Assembly: GCF_001194135.2 (NCBI RefSeq) | Contig: NC_068985.1 | Span: forward strand, 119,523,359 to 119,558,934 | Source of the DNA: Octopus bimaculoides | Taxonomy: Eukaryota | Length of the DNA stretch: 35,576 bases | Direction of reading: 5' to 3' | In this document: positions 4,231 to 28,155 of the stretch, piece after piece | Numbering within the stretch: position 1 is the stretch's first letter | How the letters are laid out: every line of letters starts with the position of its first letter | The notes under the pieces: model-generated | Told to the model about the DNA's origin: nothing | The model's input: the letters and a program-made list of their open reading frames with translations, nothing else | Databases searched by the model: none | Made by a program: the position numbers and the translations under genes

Positions 4231-4611
4231 TATAATCTTTATTAACCAAAATTGCTGTACAAGATTGACTCAAGTGCCTAGAGTACGGTGAGGTCTAAGA
4301 TGTGACTGCTATTGCAATTCGGTCGAGTGACCACGCACGTAGAGTCCCCTTCGTTAGTTCGAAATGGCTATCGTCATTTCGCTACTGTTTAATTTCAGCT
4401 GAATTTTGATCGAGTAGATTTATGATCAAAGGCATTATAGCCATGATCATCTCCTCATTTTGAGGGGTATATAAGGCAATATTATCTAATCTGTCATATT
4501 AGCAAAAAATAAAAAATAAAAAAATAAAAAAGTAAAAAAGCAATATAAGATAGCAGTTGGAGCTATCACATACAATAGAGGCTTTCCTTGCTGGCTTGAA
4601 ATAAAATATTA

Positions 4612-4733
4612 TTTTCTACTCTAGGCACAAGGCCCGAAATTTTTTGGGAGGGGACCAGTCGATTAGATCGACCCCAATACATAACAAGTACTTAATTTAT
4701 CGACCTCGAAAGGATGAAAGGCTCGCCGCCTTA
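4612..4733 (-). mobile_element. tRNA-derived SINE family A copy, internally deleted, flanked by a perfect 17-bp TSD
   Basis: cttgaaataaaatatta at 4595-4611 and 4734-4750; the body matches other copies (ttttctactctaggcacaaggcccgaaa...gaaagg|ctcgccgcctt). Confidence 0.85.
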
Positions 4734-5169
4734 CTTGAAATAAAATATTACTGATTTTATGGTCGATCGGCGTTACAAGCGAATCTTGAATCATTATATC
4801 ATTTGCACTTAATTAGACATGTTGGTGGGGTACATTTACATTCATCTTTCTAAATACCGTAAAGAGAAACCGGAAGTTGAAATATTAGCTAATCATCCGG
4901 TCATTCAGTATACCTTTAACCTTATATCTATCTAACTAGTCTTGTTTCGTTCTATTTACAACGTTAATACTCGTCTATGAAATAAAATATCTTTCGTGTC
5001 TACACCTCACCGTGTGAAATAACTTCTTTTGTGTTGTGTCATTGAACAAATGAAGTGTAATAAGGTAACTGCTAAAACTGGGTGTCTATAAGAAATCAGC
5101 ACAATTTTTTTAATGATTAAATATCTAAGACAAGCACAAAGTATGTTTTTAGGGCGAGTCATAGTTAAT

Positions 5170-5642
5170 TCTATTCTTTTCAAATTTTTGTACAAGGCCA
5201 GCAATTTTGGGAGGGGGATAAATCGATCACATCGAGCCCACTATCCAGCTGGTACTTATTTTATCGATCCCAAAATGATAAAAGCAAAGTAGACCTCGGA
5301 GAAATTTAAACTCGGAACGTAAATACGGATGAAATGTCGCTAAGCATTTCTTACGGTGTGCTAACGATTCTACTAGCTCGCCGCCTTAGTAAGAGTCAAT
5401 TATATTAACTCCAATACATTATCAGTACCTTTAATAATCCTTTCTACTATAAGCACAAAGTCTAGAATTTTGTAGGAGATCGTTAATCGATTACATCGAC
5501 CCTAGTGCTCAACTGGTACTTATTTCATCAACCTCGCAAGGATGGAAAGCAAAGTCAGCCTTGGCGGAGTTTGAACTCAGAACGTAAAGACGAGCGAAAT
5601 GTCGCCAAACATTGTGCCCGGCGGGCTAACAATCCTGGCAGT
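5170..5642 (-). mobile_element. Two tandem family A SINE copies (about 5170-5388 and 5438-5642)
   Basis: Each has the A-box-like head (GGCGGCGAGCT..AGAATCGTTAGC), the B-box (GAGTTCAAACTCC / GAGTTTAAATTTC) and the shared 3' module. Confidence 0.8.
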
Positions 5643-5759
5643 TAATAAGGAATGACAAAGTTGATATGGAATGAATTTCAATTCAGAAAGTAAAGGGACT
5701 GAATTTTCATTTTTTAGTTTGGTCAGCGGAAAGGGGTTATGCCCTAAGCTTTTACGCGC

Positions 5760-6690
5760 CTTCATAGATTGATGGGACGAACGTGGTTAATGATTTTTAT
5801 GAATACCAGCATGTCTATGGTTGCAGAAGAAAGAAAGAAACATGAGCTGGGAAGGAATTCCAGGAAGCCGACGTTGTGGAAAGGAAGAACTAGGTGTGGT
5901 ACTTCTTGAGGGTCTGGTGGATGGATACAATAGAAATGTCAAGAGAAGAGAAAACTGAGTCGGGAGTGTCCGAGTGAAAGTGACACGGCATCAGTTTTTA
6001 GGAGGAAAGGACTCTGTAATGCGGTGGAAAACTGGAGGCAAAGAGAAGTGTCAGAATGTCTGTGGTAGGGGAGAGGCTAGAGTGTGATGGTGAGTGATTT
6101 CATGCTAACCATTTGGATAATCTTTTGCATGTGGTCAAAATATCAGTGTGTATAGTAGCATCACTGTCCTAGATCTGGAGATAGTAGTGCCTTGTGGCTC
6201 TTGTTTGTAGTGAGTTAATACTTGTTGAGGACTGAAGTATTTCCTGGTTGTGAAGTAAAAAAAAAAACAAACTAGTATTTGTGATGCAATGTTTGTTATG
6301 TGAAGGATGTATATGTGCCGACGTTGTTCGTGGTGGGGAATTATTAATGATGGTGAGATCCACAATTTGTAGAGACCTCGAGGGTTTATATTTTCGGGAT
6401 CTTTATAGGTGACTGGATTCAATAAACACCATTCGGTTACGGCATGAACGTACACATGCATGGCATAAGCTTTGAGACAAGCATATGACTACTGGCAGGA
6501 TCAGCCAGGTAGGAAAGATAAGTTTGTCATGACCCCAATGGAGGATGCTGCCGAGGTCTGAGGTCTTTCTTCATGAGGTTAGTGTAAATTTGGAGTAATG
6601 TGTCGAGGTGATATATGGGAGTAATGAAGAGTGGTATCAGCTGCAGAGACTGGGCATTGGGGGAGATGAATTTACTACTGAGAATAGCTG
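5760..6690 (-). mobile_element. Decayed CR1/L2-group (Zenon-like) LINE, RT C-terminal part, interrupted by the 18S fragment
   Basis: Minus-strand translations with frameshifts: KKDL..SILHWGHDKLIF, SLQIVDLTIINN, ASQILV..TRKYFSPQQVLTHYKQ, then ..SWNSFPAHV-like 3' motifs, all in the order expected for CR1/L2 RT domains. Confidence 0.7.
6448..6511 (-). rRNA. Non-functional fragment of the 18S rRNA 5' end (nt 1 to ~64)
   Basis: Minus strand reads TACCTGGCTGATCCTGCCAGTAGTCATATGCTTGTCTCAAAGCTTATGCCATGCATGTGTACGT vs the canonical eukaryotic TACCTGGTTGATCCTGCCAGTAGTCATATGCTTGTCTCAAAGATTAAGCCATGCATGTCTAAGT: 59/64 identical by manual alignment, starting at nt 1. Confidence 0.92.
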
Positions 6691-7247
6691 TTTAATATAT
6701 CAAATAATTATTCTATCTATGCATTGAATATAAACGCGACTAATGGACATATCAAGGATATAAATAGTAAGAAGAAATAAAGCCAGTGGCTAGTGGGAAT
6801 CCAAACCACATCGTCTGATAAGTAATACTTACATTTACACACAAGAGGGACAGAAAGCACCATGTTGAGTTTAATTATATCCTTCTACTTTGAGTACAAA
6901 GCTCCCTGAAGTCGATGTGTTTTATGTATCGCGTGTAGATATATATATACCAGCTATATTTTGAGGTTATTTCGGTTCTTTATACACTGTTTTAATAAAC
7001 TATTGTCGTTATGACTTGTTTCGGATCGCCAGTACAAAAGAACCTAAGCTATACATTTCTGACTGACCATGTCTGATGAGTATGTAATTATTTTTTTGTA
7101 GGGAATATTGATTACTTATGATACCGTCCCATAGCAGAATTTATAATACAGTATAAATAGCATGCCTATTCTACTAGATTATGAGTGTCCTTTTTTTATA
7201 TCTGACTTAGAAACTTGATTGAATAACTCTTTCTCTTCTCTGTATGA

Positions 7248-7651: not shown

Positions 7652-7679
7652 TTTAGTTCTGCTTTGTTGTATGTTTCAG
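7652..7679 (+). promoter_or_regulatory. Candidate 3' splice acceptor 3 immediately before ATG 7686
   Basis: tttagttctgctttgttgtatgtttcAG|GAAAAAATG. The ORF-track ATG 7671 lies inside this acceptor-like tract. Confidence 0.5.
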
Positions 7680-9777
7680 GAAAAAATGTGTGACAAGAAA
7701 TTCGAGATTCCTGTATGGGTGAATGGAACCGAAAAATGGTTGTCAGGGATTTCTAAAAGAACTACTTGTGATGACATTATTTACGCTTTGCTAAACCATG
7801 AACATCTTCACGAAACAGAAAATACTGATTCATTCGCTATTTACGAATGCTGGAAAGGCACGGAGAAATACTTGCAAGGACGTACAAAAATTCTCCGTGT
7901 TTGGAAGAACAGGGCCGCTGATCGAAGCAACGTAAAGTTTATAATGCGTGAACTGGACGACATTGCTCAATCAAGTGAATATTCAGCAACGAAGCGTCGG
8001 TATCGGAGATGGCGCCATCAAAGGCGCTATGAACATAACTTCGATAGAAGTCTGTGCAATGAAGAAACACATGGAAGCTGTTGCTCTTACAAACAAAGGT
8101 TTGACAGTCACGACAGCCATAACAGTTATTTTAACGGCGAGCTTCGGTGTGATTTTATGAGTAGTAACACGCTGGACCACAATAAATTGCGACGCCTGCA
8201 TAAAATCATTAAACTTGTCATGAATCAGGAGAAGAAAATCAAATCATTAGCTAATCGTATCGAAGAAACAGAATTGTTAATAGAAAAATACGAAGATAAA
8301 ATCCATTTCCACCGCATGCAAAAGAAAGGCGTCAACTATGTTCAAAGATCTTTGCTTCTAGACAGTACCAGTACCAGTGAGGATTCTTTGGACGATTTTC
8401 TGTCTAAAGCTAATTTACACTTGCTAGAAGATTACGTTGAATTGCGTGACAGATTGATTGCAGTTTGTGAATTACTAGCAGCAGAAGAAGACACGATAGA
8501 CCAACTATCATCACTCATAAAAAAGCATGGTGTCCATGTGAACGAGGTTCTCTCAGATTTAAATAGAAAAGAATTTAATTCGTCATCTTCTGAAACGGGG
8601 ATTACAGAAAAAGCAAAACAAGATAAAATATCTTTTAATAATATTTTTGAAACTTCTCCGAATGGAAGCGAATGTCATTTATTATCACACGATGGTGAAA
8701 ATGTTGGGGTAATTCCTGACAGTTTGTCTTCTACAGAGGGACTTGATGAAGGTGAAAAATCGGAATTAGAGGCTCTTAGGATTCAGTTTAACCGAGTAAT
8801 GACTGTAAGCGTAATCCAGAATATAACTATGGATCAACTGAACCGGGAATTACAAAGGTATAATAAATTGCAAAATGAGAAATCAGATTTGATTCATAGT
8901 CTTGAAAAAGAAGTGTTAACAGCTGAATTGGGTTCAGTTAATAACCAAAACTGTGAAATGTCAAAATGTATTACAAATGAGGAGTCAAAACACAGGATCG
9001 ACAATATCTATTCTAACGAAAACAATTTTTCTCAACAAATAGATGATGACGGTTTTATAATTTCTGATGTTAATACACAAAACACATCCGAATTACCTAA
9101 AATTTCAAAAATTATACCAACTTCTAATAAAAAATTGATACCGACTACTAATAACAATTTGAAAGACGTTAATAAAATAGATTCAAAAAATATTGCTAAT
9201 AATCGGGAATGTGGTGTTAATATTGAAAGTTCCAGTACCCCTGATTCAAGCCCTAATTCTGTGTTAAAAGACTCAAATATAAAGAACTTAGATAATCCCA
9301 AGGTCGGTATTGCTGGAGGAGCTCCGAAATCCCAATTTGTACGAACAAAAAGTATGCGTGATTGGACAAGGTTACCGAAAGAGAATGTCTATCAACAAAT
9401 AAAGAATGTTTGTAGCAAGAAGTTTAATGATGAAGAAACGGATAACAATAAACTTCTCACACAACAACAGCAGCAGCAACAACAATTGGCCCAACAACAT
9501 CATCATTTTTACCAACATCAGCAATATAAAAAACAGCAACATCAACAACAGGAAAATAAACAGCAGCAGCAACACCAGCAGCAGCTGCAGCAACAACCAG
9601 AAGAGCAGCAACAACAGCAAAAGCAGCAAGAAAATACACACATTTCATATCCACAAACGCAGTCACCACTGCCATCACCGTCACCACCATCATTGACATC
9701 TACGCCACCATCTCCCTTACTGAAACAGCATCAACACCACCAACAAAAGCAACATCATCATCATAATCATCAGCAAC

Positions 9778-9830
<53 letters not shown>

Positions 9831-10265
9831 CTGCAGCAGCAGCAACAACAACTTCAACAAAAACCACCATCTCCACTACCAACACAACAATCGTCACAAC
9901 AACAACAACAACAATTACAACAAAAACCACCGTCACCACGACCAGCAGCACCACCACAACCATCTCAACAACAACTACAACCACAAAGACTGCAAGAAAA
10001 ACCACCGTTGCCAGGACCTGCTCCAAAACTATCACCACAGCAAAAACCACAACACCACCTACAACAACAATTGGTCACTTTAGAGCAATCTAAGCAGCAA
10101 AGCAAGCTGCAGATGATAACAAACAGTCTGAAGGGAGCCATTAAAAACAGAAGTCCAATACTGAAATTGGATAAATCAGACGACACTGATTCTACATCCG
10201 ATACAGGTCTAGGTTCGATAACCAGTGACGACTTCTCAAACACCCATATCGAAACACTCGTATGA
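7671..10265 (+). CDS. RASSF10: N-terminal Ras-association domain family protein (RASSF9/RASSF10-like; Drosophila Meru group), uninterrupted CDS; true start may be ATG 7686
   Basis: 864-aa ORF. The N-terminus EIPVWVNGTEKWLSGISKRTTCDDIIYALL...FAIYECWKGTEKYLQGRTKILRVWK matches the RA-domain pattern of N-terminal RASSFs. It is followed by coiled-coil segments (IIKLVMNQEKKIKSL; LRDRLIAVCELLAAEEDTIDQL) and a C-terminal D-S-x-S-D-T-G-L-G-S...ETLV tail that resembles, from memory, vertebrate RASSF10 tails. Tandem stops TGA TAA. RASSF9 vs RASSF10 orthology cannot be resolved by eye; probably a co-ortholog. Confidence 0.88.
9460..10080 (+). repeat. Coding (CAA/CAG)n polyglutamine and Pro-rich low-complexity region within the RASSF CDS
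   Basis: Multiple CAA-rich runs in frame, e.g. 9772-9830, plus repeated LQQKPPSP units. Confidence 0.95.
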
Positions 10266-12945: not shown

Positions 12946-13730
12946 TAGCATACATACTATGATGTAATAACACTGGCAAAAATACTGTCAAATATGTAAG
13001 ACTGGTGTTCAGTTGTATCGAACAGACCGCTAGCCAATGATTATTCACAGGCGCGATTCCGCTACTGCTTGACACGGGGTTTTTAGCCTGCTGCGTTTCT
13101 GCCTTGGATCAAATCGACTCTCTTTAGACAACCTGGTCCTAATGAGCTCCCTCGCCAGGGAGACATCCGATCGTTTAGCGTAGACATCTGATCGCCGCAG
13201 AAAACCGATTCCTATCTTCAAACCAGCCAAGCCTCCGAGTGGCTAGATTATAGGAGCACGTCACAGATCCCAGTGATTTTAAATTATTCTATGTCTACTC
13301 TGGCCTAACATTAGTTAGGTTGGTCCACATTGTTTCACGTTACTCGTTTACCTTTTTATTACGTCGTGTCAATTAATTTCATGTCAAATGTTTATAAAAA
13401 TAACCAAACGGATGACAGGAGGCCGCAACTCCAGACATTTAAATGTAGTTTCTTAACCATAATATCGCAATATTAACGTTATCTCATTTACACTATTATT
13501 TTGTTTTATACAAGCAGCGAACACTAATACAAAGAGAAAGAAATCTTACAATTATAAATTATCTTTAACCGTAATTACAAAAAAAATAAAAAAAGAAACA
13601 AATTCGCTAATTGCTGATTGTGTTGAATCTCTCACATAACAAATTACATTTACATTTAATCACAGGCAAAACAAATTCATACACATGATATAAAAAATGT
13701 CAAAAAAGAATGTGGTACAAAGTAAAAAGA

Positions 13731-17257: not shown

Positions 17258-17910
17258 TCATCGGTAGAGTGGGAAAACCTGGAATTTGGGAGACGTATTT
17301 TTTGCACATATGTCTATGTGACCACGCAGTGGGATCCGTCTAGTACTGGGGTCTCGTATTTGTTGTCGGTGAATGGTCAGTCTATTTCTTAGAATAAGCT
17401 TTGTTTGCCCCATGTAATCTTCATTACATCCTTGACTTTTGATAGCATATATCAAGTTCCTTGGAGAACATGTAAAGTGATTTTTTACGGTAAAAGTCTG
17501 CCCTGATTTGAATTTGTATGTTGTGTCTTCAATAAGGTTGATGCAGGAACCGCAACTGGGGCGGCCACATGTTTTGACTGTTGGTGTAGGAATTGTGGAT
17601 GGTAATTTAGCACTTGTGAAGAATTTTTTGAGGGATTTTGATTGCCATTTACTTTTGATTATTTTGTGTATTTCGAATGCGTGTTTCATTCTTGGGTCTT
17701 GTTTTAGTAATGGGATGTTCTGGTGGATAATATTGTAAACCCTGTGTTTCTTGGGTTGGGTATTGTAATAAAGGGTAGATTATTGGGTGTATCTGGAGCG
17801 TTTTTCGTAGCTCTTCGATATTTATTGCTTTGGCACGCTCTATTCCGTTGATTGTTAGCATTAATAAACTGTCTTGATTATAACTAAACATGTTCACTCA
17901 ACCGTGTCGG
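17258..17910 (-). mobile_element. Penelope-like element fragment (Neptune-type linker): RT C-terminus plus GIY-YIG endonuclease
   Basis: INGIERAKAI..., MKHAFEIHKIIKSK.QSKSLKKFFTSAKL, CGRPSCGSC, FTCSPRNLIYAIKSQGCNEDYMGQT..LRNRLTIHRQQI..H: a GIY-YIG bipartite motif (LIY...YMG) with Cys/His ligands. Confidence 0.88.
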
Positions 17911-18434: not shown

Positions 18435-18709
18435 NNNNNNNNNNNNNNNNNNNNNNNNNNNNCACACACAAACACACACACACACACACACACACATATG
18501 TATATATACACACACACACACAAGCACACATGTAAACGACATCTTTGTACAGTTCTTCTCTATCAAATCCACTCACAAGGGTTTGGTTGGCCCGGTGCTG
18601 TAGTAGAAGACACTTTCTTAAGGTGCCACGTAGCAGCACTGAATCCAAGACCACATGAATCGCACACACGCAGGCAGGCAGGCACGAACGAACGCCCAGA
18701 TGCGTGCAT

Positions 18710-28047: not shown

Positions 28048-28155
28048 NNNNNNNNNNNNNNNNNNNNNNNNNNNNNNNNNNNNNNNNNNNNNNNNNNNNN
28101 NNNNNNNNNNNNNNNNNNNNNGAGAGAGAGAGAGAGAGAGAGAGATAGAGAGAGA

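What the first reader, a model, noticed from the sequence alone, without database searches (positions are those of the whole stretch)
6400..6560. The exact 5' end of 18S rRNA sits co-directionally inside a LINE reverse-transcriptase sequence (LINE-18S-LINE chimera)
Seen: 6511->6448 is 18S nt 1-64 (59/64 to the eukaryotic consensus), starting precisely at the mature 5' end. Upstream on the same strand the LINE reads ..KKDL..SILHWGHDKLIF. Downstream it resumes TTCATGCCGTAACCGAATGGTGTTTATTG, interpretable as decayed F-N-A-x-K-T-x-C-L-L, and continues to RKYFSPQQVLTHYKQ. Little or no LINE sequence appears lost. Established: LINE RTs template-switch onto cellular RNAs (e.g. U6/L1 chimeras), but those are usually two-part 5'-RNA/3'-LINE fusions. 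Inference: this three-part structure means either a double template jump (LINE to 18S, run-off at the rRNA 5' end, back to LINE) or later capture of an 18S 5'-terminal small RNA into an old LINE copy. If the insert is shared across many copies, it would be a LINE subfamily that propagates an rRNA segment, which would be new.
Basis: partly seen in the sequence, partly recalled or inferred. Interest (0 to 1): 0.78.

Follow-up and report, generated by a model that had tools for sequence, protein, structure and literature searches.

The report
18S rRNA start inside LINE relic
A decayed, single-copy LINE retrotransposon fragment carries an 85-base patch copied from the first 83 bases of 18S ribosomal RNA; it is a real one-off scar of reverse transcription, not a LINE family that spreads an rRNA segment.

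Summary
The three-part structure is real, but its anatomy differs from the finding. On the minus strand a 5'-truncated, decayed LINE copy (about 6699 to 5650) is interrupted by 'CC' plus 18S rRNA nt 1-83 (6513 to 6429, possibly to 6427).

The species' own rDNA reads match this stretch at 78 of 83 positions with no indels, and they diverge from the window exactly at nt 1. The LINE actually resumes at 'CLL' (6428), and about seven codons (NASKTQx, roughly 21 nt) are missing.

Both flanks align to the same non-LTR reverse transcriptases, in the same order and orientation. Both junctions appear in independent runs at single-copy depth. No other locus shares either junction at 80% identity or more, so no rRNA-carrying LINE subfamily is supported.

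The patch has no target-site duplication and no poly(A). It has a small target deletion and two extra bases. This fits an RNA-templated patch at a DNA break in an older LINE copy (about 0.5). A double template switch during the LINE's own reverse transcription remains possible (about 0.27). The age comparison and the sister-species test were both inconclusive. Interest is low to moderate.

The parts
6514..6699 (-). LINE part A: a decayed RT fragment running from just upstream of the YxDD box to '...DLGSILHWGHDKLIF'. The F codon is 6516-6514. The 5'-truncated start of the copy is near 6699.
   Evidence: Frameshift-aware alignments of real RT proteins to this flank alone score 62-70, against a shuffled null of 37-40 +/- 4-5. 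At least 8 proteins end at 6517. No LINE homology lies further upstream.
6636..6647 (-). Remnant of the RT catalytic box YADD, now 'SAAD'.
   Evidence: Column mapping against 45 relatives gives A>A at 6644, D>A at 6641 and D>D at 6638. The frame-2 translation reads 'PVSAADTTLH'.
6512..6513 (-). Two extra bases, 'CC', between the LINE F codon and 18S nt 1. They are not LINE (relatives continue with Asn, AAY) and not the major ETS.
   Evidence: Sequence. The major ETS in rDNA reads ends ...CGACGA. Four reads of a minor 18S-bearing sequence also have CC before nt 1 (loose end at 6513). The CC is therefore either untemplated or copied from that variant.
6429..6511 (-). Copy of 18S rRNA nt 1-83, in sense orientation relative to the LINE. 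Positions 6428-6427 may also be 18S, which would give a 2-nt overlap with the LINE Cys codon.
   Evidence: Rfam match from model position 1. Own rDNA reads agree at 78/83 with no indels and diverge at 6511/6512. There is no 18S similarity beyond 6428: 883 of 1000 shuffles score as high.
5790..6428 (-). LINE part B: the decayed C-terminal part of ORF2. Recognisable stretches are 'CLLNPVTYKDP...', 'HITNIASQ..', 'RKYFSPQQVLTHYKQ', 'QTRATRHYYLQI*', 'DHMQKII..L*PLPYHRH' and 'SWNSFP/LEFLPSSCF..MLVFIKIINHV'.
   Evidence: Frameshift-aware scores are 94-115, against a null of 43-47 +/- 5-6. tblastn gives high-scoring segment pairs (HSPs) at 6302-6198 with E 0.001. The order matches part A in the same proteins. 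There are 3-4 stops and 3-8 frameshifts per roughly 150 codons.
5653..5789 (-). Presumed 3' untranslated remnant of the LINE copy. Its true 3' end and any tail are obscured.
   Evidence: This is inference. ORF2 homology ends near 5790-5840. A SINE-like repeat starts at about 5652.
5433..5652 (-). SINE-like repeat abutting the LINE 3' end. It is one of three copies in 4605-5652. It is context, not part of the chimera.
   Evidence: Direct-repeat families D2-D6 at 71-77% identity; sequence.

Best explanation
An old, already inserted and 5'-truncated LINE copy suffered a DNA break inside its RT-coding region. The break was sealed with a short cDNA patch copied by a reverse transcriptase from the 5'-terminal 83 nt of mature, or nearly mature, 18S rRNA.

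Synthesis ran from about nt 83 to the 5' end of the rRNA and stopped there. Two bases (CC in the sense strand) were added or carried along. About 21 bp of the LINE (codons NASKTQx) were lost at the break.

The result is a functionless, fixed, single-locus scar. Its position inside a LINE, and its orientation relative to that LINE, are coincidental.

Shown: the anatomy, the RNA-like 5' boundary, the deletion, the lack of TSD and poly(A), and the single-copy status. Inferred: that the patch came after the LINE insertion, and which enzyme made it.
For: (1) The insert's homology to rDNA ends exactly at 18S nt 1, while rDNA reads continue into the ETS. This points to a processed RNA template, not rDNA.
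(2) There is no poly(A) or LINE tail after nt 83 and no duplicated target. Instead the LINE order shows a net loss of about 7 codons, and there are 2 extra nt at the 5' junction. These are the published hallmarks of class-2 templated insertions and endonuclease-independent (ENi), RNA-templated break repair: no TSD, no poly(A), microdeletion, non-templated nucleotides, RNA-derived (PMC5110952).
(3) The locus is unique. Flanks and junctions are at single-copy depth in 4-7 runs at 80% identity or more.
(4) The 18S piece has 5/83 differences and no indel, while the LINE has 3-4 stops and 3-8 frameshifts per roughly 150 codons. This is in the direction expected if the patch is younger: P(5 or fewer differences) is 0.03 if LINE divergence is 13%, and 0.01 if it is 15%.
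(5) rRNA is the most abundant cellular RNA, and other 18S-derived pieces are dispersed in this genome.
(6) Prior from the literature: known LINE template-switch chimeras place the foreign RNA at the 5' end of the insertion (A-B or A-B-C), never inside the LINE.
Against: If the patch landed at random, falling inside a LINE and in the sense orientation is a coincidence of perhaps 3-10%. That figure is my estimate and was not measured here.

The age difference is not significant if the LINE is only 8-10% diverged (P = 0.15-0.34). The upstream LINE flank looks little decayed, at 40-47% identity to relatives, which are 44-47% identical to one another.

No allele or sister-species locus with the intact LINE could be found. 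The enzyme and the break are inferred, not observed.
Confidence: 0.5

Rival explanations
1. Double template switch within one retrotransposition event. While copying its own RNA during target-primed reverse transcription, the LINE RT left the LINE RNA at the Cys codon (6428) and continued on 18S rRNA from about nt 83 to its 5' end. It added two bases, re-engaged the same LINE RNA about 21 nt upstream of where it had left, copied another 186 nt or so, and then terminated.
For: The position inside a LINE, the sense orientation and the near-preserved order all follow naturally from this model. Run-off at the rRNA 5' end plus extra nucleotides is typical of non-LTR RT template jumping (review PMC2881922). 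Double switches giving tripartite chimeras are documented (PMC2104539). Sense-oriented 28S rRNA/L1 chimeras exist (bioRxiv 10.1101/2025.02.02.635956). The 18S divergence (5/83; 95% CI 2-13.5%) overlaps plausible LINE divergence.
Against: No A-B-A LINE chimera turned up in the papers read. The known chimeras have the foreign RNA at the 5' end, and the whole unit is flanked by a TSD.

Re-entry at an internal site of the same RNA within 21 nt needs an extra assumption. The 'CC' does not give a sensible annealing register on the expected LINE sequence (F-N-A = TTY AAY GCN).

The event is not recurrent: no second locus shares the junctions. A TSD for the LINE as a whole could not be examined because a SINE abuts the 3' end.
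Confidence: 0.27
2. The chimera is a member of a LINE (or SINE-like) subfamily that carries an 18S module and has propagated it.
For: The genome, and a related species, hold several single-copy-depth contigs with 18S 5'-like pieces.
Against: Windows 6380-6426 and 6513-6580 are covered only by the locus's own contig in 4 runs at 80% identity or more. The 3' junction stretch 6396-6464 is hit by exactly one contig per run. The other 18S-bearing contigs are 86-93% like the window's 18S piece, yet their flanks do not align to the LINE flanks. Those alignments are in any case capped by the extent of 18S in the window, so the other loci may simply be longer rDNA pseudogenes.
Confidence: 0.03
3. DNA-level origin: a piece of rDNA, or of an rDNA pseudogene, was captured or converted into the LINE with no RNA intermediate.
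For: Filler DNA at breaks can come from anywhere. A minor 18S-bearing sequence in the genome also has 'CC' immediately before nt 1 (4 reads). So the boundary could lie 2 nt upstream of the mature end.
Against: Homology to the major rDNA stops exactly at the mature 5' end (64 reads; Rfam model position 1). A random DNA breakpoint would rarely fall there.
Confidence: 0.06
4. Assembly chimera joining two loci through the 38-nt stretch that is identical to rDNA (6466-6503).
For: No single short-read contig spans the whole insert. Logan contigs break at 6474-6495.
Against: The two contigs overlap by 22 nt. Each carries the insert's private variants joined to a unique flank at equal single-copy depth in runs from several studies and years. 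The LINE reading continues in order across the insert. Raw 150-nt reads run from the downstream flank through the insert to about 6516.
Confidence: 0.02

Closest known systems
Class 2 templated sequence insertions / endonuclease-independent RNA-templated break repair (Onozawa & Aplan, PMC5110952; Morrish et al. 2002 as cited there)
   Same: A short insert derived from an RNA. No TSD, no poly(A), a microdeletion of the target and extra nucleotides at a junction. A single, non-propagating event.
   Different: These were described in human cells and human polymorphisms. Here the donor is the 5' end of 18S rRNA and the host is an invertebrate-type genome. The break, the enzyme and the timing are inferred, and no empty allele is available.
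28S rRNA/LINE-1 and U6/LINE-1 chimeric insertions (bioRxiv 10.1101/2025.02.02.635956)
   Same: An rRNA fragment fused in sense orientation directly to a 5'-truncated LINE body, attributed to template switching or RNA ligation during TPRT.
   Different: Those are two-part, with the RNA at the 5' end, then the LINE, and a TSD around the whole unit. 18S is not among the donors reported there. Here LINE sequence continues in order on the far side of the rRNA piece, and the LINE is not an L1.
Tripartite chimeric retrogenes (WEIRD/Mg-SINE/MGL; B2/U6/L1; Gogvadze et al. 2007, PMC2104539)
   Same: Three segments joined head to tail in one orientation, explained by two template switches of a LINE RT.
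   Different: Those join three different RNAs (A-B-C) and are flanked by 14-16-bp direct repeats. Here the third segment is the first template again (A-B-A), with a 21-nt skip, and no TSD can be assigned.
rRNA-derived SINEs (5S-derived SINE3, 28S-derived SINE28; cited)
   Same: rRNA-derived sequence associated with LINE machinery.
   Different: Those are multi-copy families that propagate. This is one locus, and its junctions occur nowhere else at 80% identity or more.

Membership tests
LINE (non-LTR retrotransposon) copy | Reverse-transcriptase homology including the YxDD box | tested here: met
   Frameshift-aware alignments to RT proteins carrying PF00078 score 94-115 against a null of 43-47. 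The upstream flank alone scores 62-70 against 37-40. The YADD box survives as 'SAAD'. Pfam on the stitched translation alone found nothing.
LINE (non-LTR retrotransposon) copy | Relatives are non-LTR elements rather than other RT classes | tested here: met
   Relative P0099, which aligns to both flanks, hits LINE-1 ORF2p (E 1e-16) and R2 proteins (E 1e-14) in the PDB. A group II intron RT scores only E 4e-4.
LINE (non-LTR retrotransposon) copy | 3' tail and target-site duplication of the copy | tested here: inconclusive
   A SINE-like repeat abuts the 3' end at about 5652, and the 5' end near 6699 is not sharp.
Eukaryotic 18S rRNA (Rfam RF01960) fragment | Match to the SSU model and to the species' own rDNA, starting at position 1 | tested here: met
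   41.8 bits, E 5.6e-10, from model position 1. 78/83 identity to own rDNA reads. It is below the gathering score (50), so it is a fragment and not a gene.
LINE template-switch chimeric retrogene (Buzdin type) | Cellular RNA copy fused in sense to a 5'-truncated LINE 3' part | tested here: met
   18S nt 1-83 is followed directly by the LINE from 'CLL' to the ORF2 end.
LINE template-switch chimeric retrogene (Buzdin type) | The foreign RNA forms the 5' end of the insertion, and the whole unit is flanked by a TSD | tested here: not met
   The sequence upstream of 18S nt 1 is the same LINE in order (186 nt), not target DNA. No direct repeat flanks the insert.
Class 2 templated insertion / ENi-type RNA patch | No TSD and no poly(A) at the insert | tested here: met
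   The junction sequences are ...ATCTTTCC|TACCTGG and ...GAATGG|TGTTTATTG. The repeat finder shows no flanking duplication.
Class 2 templated insertion / ENi-type RNA patch | Microdeletion of the target, with non-templated bases or microhomology | tested here: met
   About 7 +/- 2 LINE codons are missing, judged by order against at least 8 relatives. There is an extra 'CC', and a possible 2-nt 'TG' overlap at 6428-6427.
Class 2 templated insertion / ENi-type RNA patch | The target existed before the insertion (an empty allele or ortholog) | tested here: inconclusive
   All runs of the species carry the insert. The related species (organism B) shows no alignable ortholog of 5900-7200 at 80% identity or more.
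rRNA-carrying LINE/SINE subfamily | Several copies sharing the same LINE-rRNA junctions | tested here: not met
   The junction-flank windows are single-copy in 4 runs at 80% identity or more. Raw-read depth of the flanks is about single-copy.

The most novel reading that the evidence does not exclude
The structure records a LINE reverse transcriptase that hopped from its own RNA onto 18S rRNA, ran off the rRNA's 5' end, and hopped back onto the same LINE RNA about 21 nt further on, all within one integration event. This would be an A-B-A 'copy-choice' product. Such products are known for RNA viruses (my own knowledge), but none was found described for LINEs in the papers read.
Probability: 0.25. 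Interest if true: 0.5.

Novelty: new member of a known kind. Interest (0 to 1): 0.22.

Why it matters
This is a clean natural example of a reverse-transcribed piece of ribosomal RNA sealed into chromosomal DNA. It has base-level junctions: a start at 18S nt 1, two extra bases, and a 21-bp target loss.

One locus does not change what is known about LINEs. It carries no sign of function or spread.

It would matter more if a genome-wide survey showed that rRNA pieces sit inside LINE bodies, in the sense orientation, more often than chance allows. That would point to intra-template hopping by non-L1 LINE reverse transcriptases, and to physical proximity of LINE particles and ribosomes.

For annotation, it is a caution. 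A short 18S-like hit inside a repeat is a relic, not an rRNA gene, and a chance 108-codon ORF (6135-6461) runs through it.

Tried and rejected
1. Pfam on a stitched translation of the flanks found no family. A word-indexed homolog search with the same translation gave 192 candidates, none significant. The copy is too decayed.
2. An exhaustive phmmer of the 97 residues after the insert against 1.84 billion representatives gave one hit (P0121, E 2e-5). It is a repetitive 'PGHEQRRHFFGLHL' protein matching by chance, not a LINE.
3. I tested whether 18S extends to about nt 100 ('ATTGAATCCAGT' versus 'ATTAAATCAGT'). It is not better than shuffles, so I rejected it. This also removes my idea of a homology-guided switch at that spot.
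4. I tested nested insertion, meaning a two-part 18S/LINE chimera landing in an older LINE. No remainder of a LINE lies beyond the 3' end or upstream of 6700, and there are no other hits to this clade in the window. I rejected it.
5. I tried a relative-age test using conserved-column loss (36 of 60 changed), identities, stops and frameshifts and a stop-codon simulation. The LINE divergence could be anywhere from about 8% to 20%, so it cannot be separated from 5/83.
6. I tried an empty-site test in a related species. Nothing orthologous was alignable.
7. Two attempts to read the species' own 18S beyond nt 85 from loose read ends failed because of seeding and threshold effects. No PacBio run was available. 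The host ORF is not on record in the contig index.
8. A whole-window frameshift-aware scan timed out. I replaced it with tblastn.

Full report
OBSERVATION. On the minus strand, 6511 to 6448 reads TACCTGGCTGATCCTGCCAGTAGTCATATGC.... Rfam's eukaryotic SSU model aligns from model position 1 at 6511 (41.8 bits, E 5.6e-10). The score is below the gathering score because only a fragment is present. A plain local alignment to the Rfam consensus scores 49, against 8.7 +/- 1.5 for 1000 shuffles. The 18S start is real and far beyond chance.

EXTENT OF THE 18S PIECE. I laid raw genomic reads of the same species on the locus. The high-depth rDNA reads match from 6511 down to about 6427-6429. They show only five differences (6504, 6465, 6456, 6450, 6436) and no indels.
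- On the other side, 64 reads leave the window exactly at 6511/6512 and continue into a (TCG)n spacer.
- The piece is therefore 18S nt 1-83 (possibly 85), with 78/83 identity to the species' rDNA. It is not nt 1-64.
- Beyond 6428 there is no similarity to 18S: 883 of 1000 shuffles score as well.

THE FLANKS.
- A stitched translation alone gave nothing in Pfam or in a word-indexed protein search.
The search returned 373 real proteins, many carrying PF00078 and named reverse transcriptase.
- One of them (P0099) hits LINE-1 ORF2p and R2 proteins in the PDB.
- tblastn of these proteins on the window gives weak HSPs that lie in consistent order.
- A frameshift-tolerant protein-to-DNA alignment that I wrote gives 94-115 over 6699 to 5839, against 43-47 +/- 5-6 for shuffled DNA. 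The upstream flank alone gives 62-70, against 37-40 +/- 4-5.
- The upstream flank holds the YADD box (now SAAD, 6647-6636) and ends '...DLGSILHWGHDKLIF' (F = 6516-6514). In 45 relatives this motif reads 'DL..IS.WG..NLV.FNASKTQ.C..S.K'.
- The downstream flank starts 'CLLNPVTYKDP', and relative P0085 reads 'KTQCCLLSHKRAADP'. It runs through 'RKYFSPQQVLTHYKQ', 'QIRP.LEY'-like, 'LSHRR'-like and 'LWNSLP'-like stretches to about 5790.
- In at least eight proteins the two flanks map in order. The relatives have 50-53 residues between the F and the 'HI' motif, where the window has 211 nt. Subtracting the 85-nt insert leaves 42 codons, so about seven codons (NASKTQx, roughly 21 nt) are missing.
- Two bases, CC (6513-6512), belong neither to the LINE (the next codon should be Asn) nor to the major ETS. 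Four reads of a minor 18S-bearing sequence also have CC before nt 1. The CC may therefore be templated by a variant or untemplated.
- No LINE homology continues upstream of about 6700 or downstream of about 5650. No other hit to this LINE clade exists in the window. This excludes a nested-insertion layout.
- A SINE-like repeat, one of three copies, abuts the 3' end. The TSD of the LINE copy cannot be read.

IS IT REAL, AND IS IT REPEATED?
- In Logan contigs of runs from several studies, a 924-bp contig covers 5600-6495 and a 795-bp contig covers 6474-7268. Both have zero mismatches and equal single-copy depth (13.6 and 16.6; 12 and 14; 58 and 60).
- The contigs break only inside the 38-nt stretch that is identical to rDNA.
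- Raw reads at 99% identity or more cross the 3' junction.
- At 80% identity or more, the flank windows 6380-6426 and 6513-6580, and the junction stretch 6396-6464, are hit only by the locus's own contig. Raw-read depth over the LINE flanks is about single-copy.
- Other contigs at single-copy depth carry 18S 5'-like pieces with 4-12 mismatches to the window's piece, but their flanks do not match the LINE flanks.
- Because the window holds only 83 nt of 18S, those alignments are capped. The other loci may be longer rDNA pseudogenes.
- I conclude that the locus is genuine, fixed in the species and unique. The idea of a LINE subfamily that propagates an rRNA segment is not supported.

MECHANISM. 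The sharp end at nt 1 argues for an RNA template copied to its 5' end. Two routes remain.

(B) A later, RNA-templated patch at a DNA break in the old LINE copy.
- It predicts no TSD, no poly(A), a small target deletion and stray bases. This is what is seen, and it matches published class-2 templated insertions and endonuclease-independent events (PMC5110952).
- It requires that landing in a LINE, in the sense orientation, be a coincidence.

(A) A double template switch during the LINE's own reverse transcription.
- It explains the location and orientation naturally. It has precedents in template jumping and in tripartite chimeras (PMC2881922; PMC2104539), and in sense-oriented 28S/L1 chimeras.
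- However, all described chimeras put the foreign RNA at the 5' end with a TSD around the whole unit. None of the papers I read describes a return to the same template.
- The CC gives no sensible annealing register on the expected LINE sequence.

I tried to separate the two routes by age.
- The 18S piece has 5/83 differences (95% CI 2-13.5%) and no indel. The LINE has 3-4 stops and 3-8 frameshifts per roughly 150 codons, and 36 of 60 conserved columns are changed.
- Simulation puts LINE divergence anywhere between about 8% and 20%. P(5 or fewer differences) then ranges from 0.34 to 0.0003. This leans towards a younger patch but is not decisive.
- A related species (39% of 31-mers shared in the neighbouring ORF) shows no alignable ortholog of the region. 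It shows only short multi-copy patches at conserved LINE motifs. No empty-site test was possible.
- On structural fit and on the rarity of A-B-A products in the literature, I put (B) at about 0.5 and (A) at about 0.27.

COMPARISON AND VERDICT. The element works like a templated patch insertion or an rRNA retro-fragment. It resembles LINE template-switch chimeras but fails their defining layout (foreign RNA at the 5' end, TSD around the whole unit). It is a new instance of known kinds of event, with no sign of function, expression (no junction or flank reads in the RNA run) or spread. Interest is low to moderate. The one reading that would raise it, an intra-template A-B-A hop by a LINE RT, is not excluded.

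CONTEXT. The window is from an animal genome rich in CA/TA microsatellites. Other features are:
- an RA-domain (RASSF8-like) ORF at 7671-10265;
- an SRP RNA match;
- a weak GIY-YIG ORF;
- tRNA-type SINE-like repeats that I recall, from memory only, as typical of octopus genomes. The organism was not identified with tools.

Noticed in passing
window 12997-13274 (-): Full-length match to metazoan SRP (7SL) RNA, model positions 1-299, at 77 bits (gathering score 70). It has no poly(A), and a T-run lies about 25 nt downstream. It could be a genuine gene or a decayed copy. No LINE of the clade studied here flanks it.
   Followed up: partly
reads laid at window 6483-6485 and 6513 (runs X14-X16): About 8 reads per run, at roughly 1x sampling, join 18S from about nt 27-29 to a perfect palindrome, (CATA)GGTTCGTCCATCGATCGATGGACGAACC(TATG). 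Four further reads place the same sequence, ending in ...GACGAACC, directly before 18S nt 1. This is a minor rDNA or 18S-bearing variant, or a fold-back structure. Its 'CC' before nt 1 matches the two extra bases of the insert.
   Followed up: partly
contigs laid on window 6427-6511 (runs X1-X4, X8; related species X25-X27): At least 7-8 contigs at single-copy depth carry 18S 5'-like sequence, 86-93% like the insert, with unrelated flanks. Contigs with the same alignment boundaries and similar mismatch counts occur in the related species. This suggests old, shared, dispersed 18S-derived loci or low-copy divergent rDNA.
   Followed up: partly
RNA run X17 laid on window 6430-6511: The 18S-like RNA reads differ from the DNA runs' major rDNA at three more positions (6481, 6496, 6499). 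They continue beyond nt 1 into a different sequence (TCAGAAAAGCATGTGG... on the + strand). This indicates a second rDNA type, another organism in the sample, or a library effect.
   Followed up: no
window 4605-4748, 5172-5403, 5433-5652 (-): Three diverged copies (71-77% identity) of a SINE-like repeat about 200-230 nt long, with a tRNA-like head. The last copy is 5'-truncated and abuts the LINE 3' end.
   Followed up: partly
window 17258-17689 (-): A 143-codon ORF with a weak GIY-YIG nuclease match (E 0.003, below Pfam's cut-off). It could be the endonuclease end of a Penelope-like element.
   Followed up: partly
window 7671-10265 (+): An uninterrupted 864-codon ORF with an N-terminal Ras-association domain (RA, RASSF8-10-type) and a long Gln/His/Pro-rich tail. 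The LINE-18S relic lies about 1 kb upstream of it on the opposite strand.
   Followed up: partly
window 18435-18462 and 28048-28121: Two runs of N (assembly gaps), each sitting inside a dinucleotide microsatellite tract.
   Followed up: no
window 6135-6461 (-): A 108-codon open frame runs from inside the 18S piece through decayed LINE sequence. It arose by chance and should not be annotated as a gene.
   Followed up: yes
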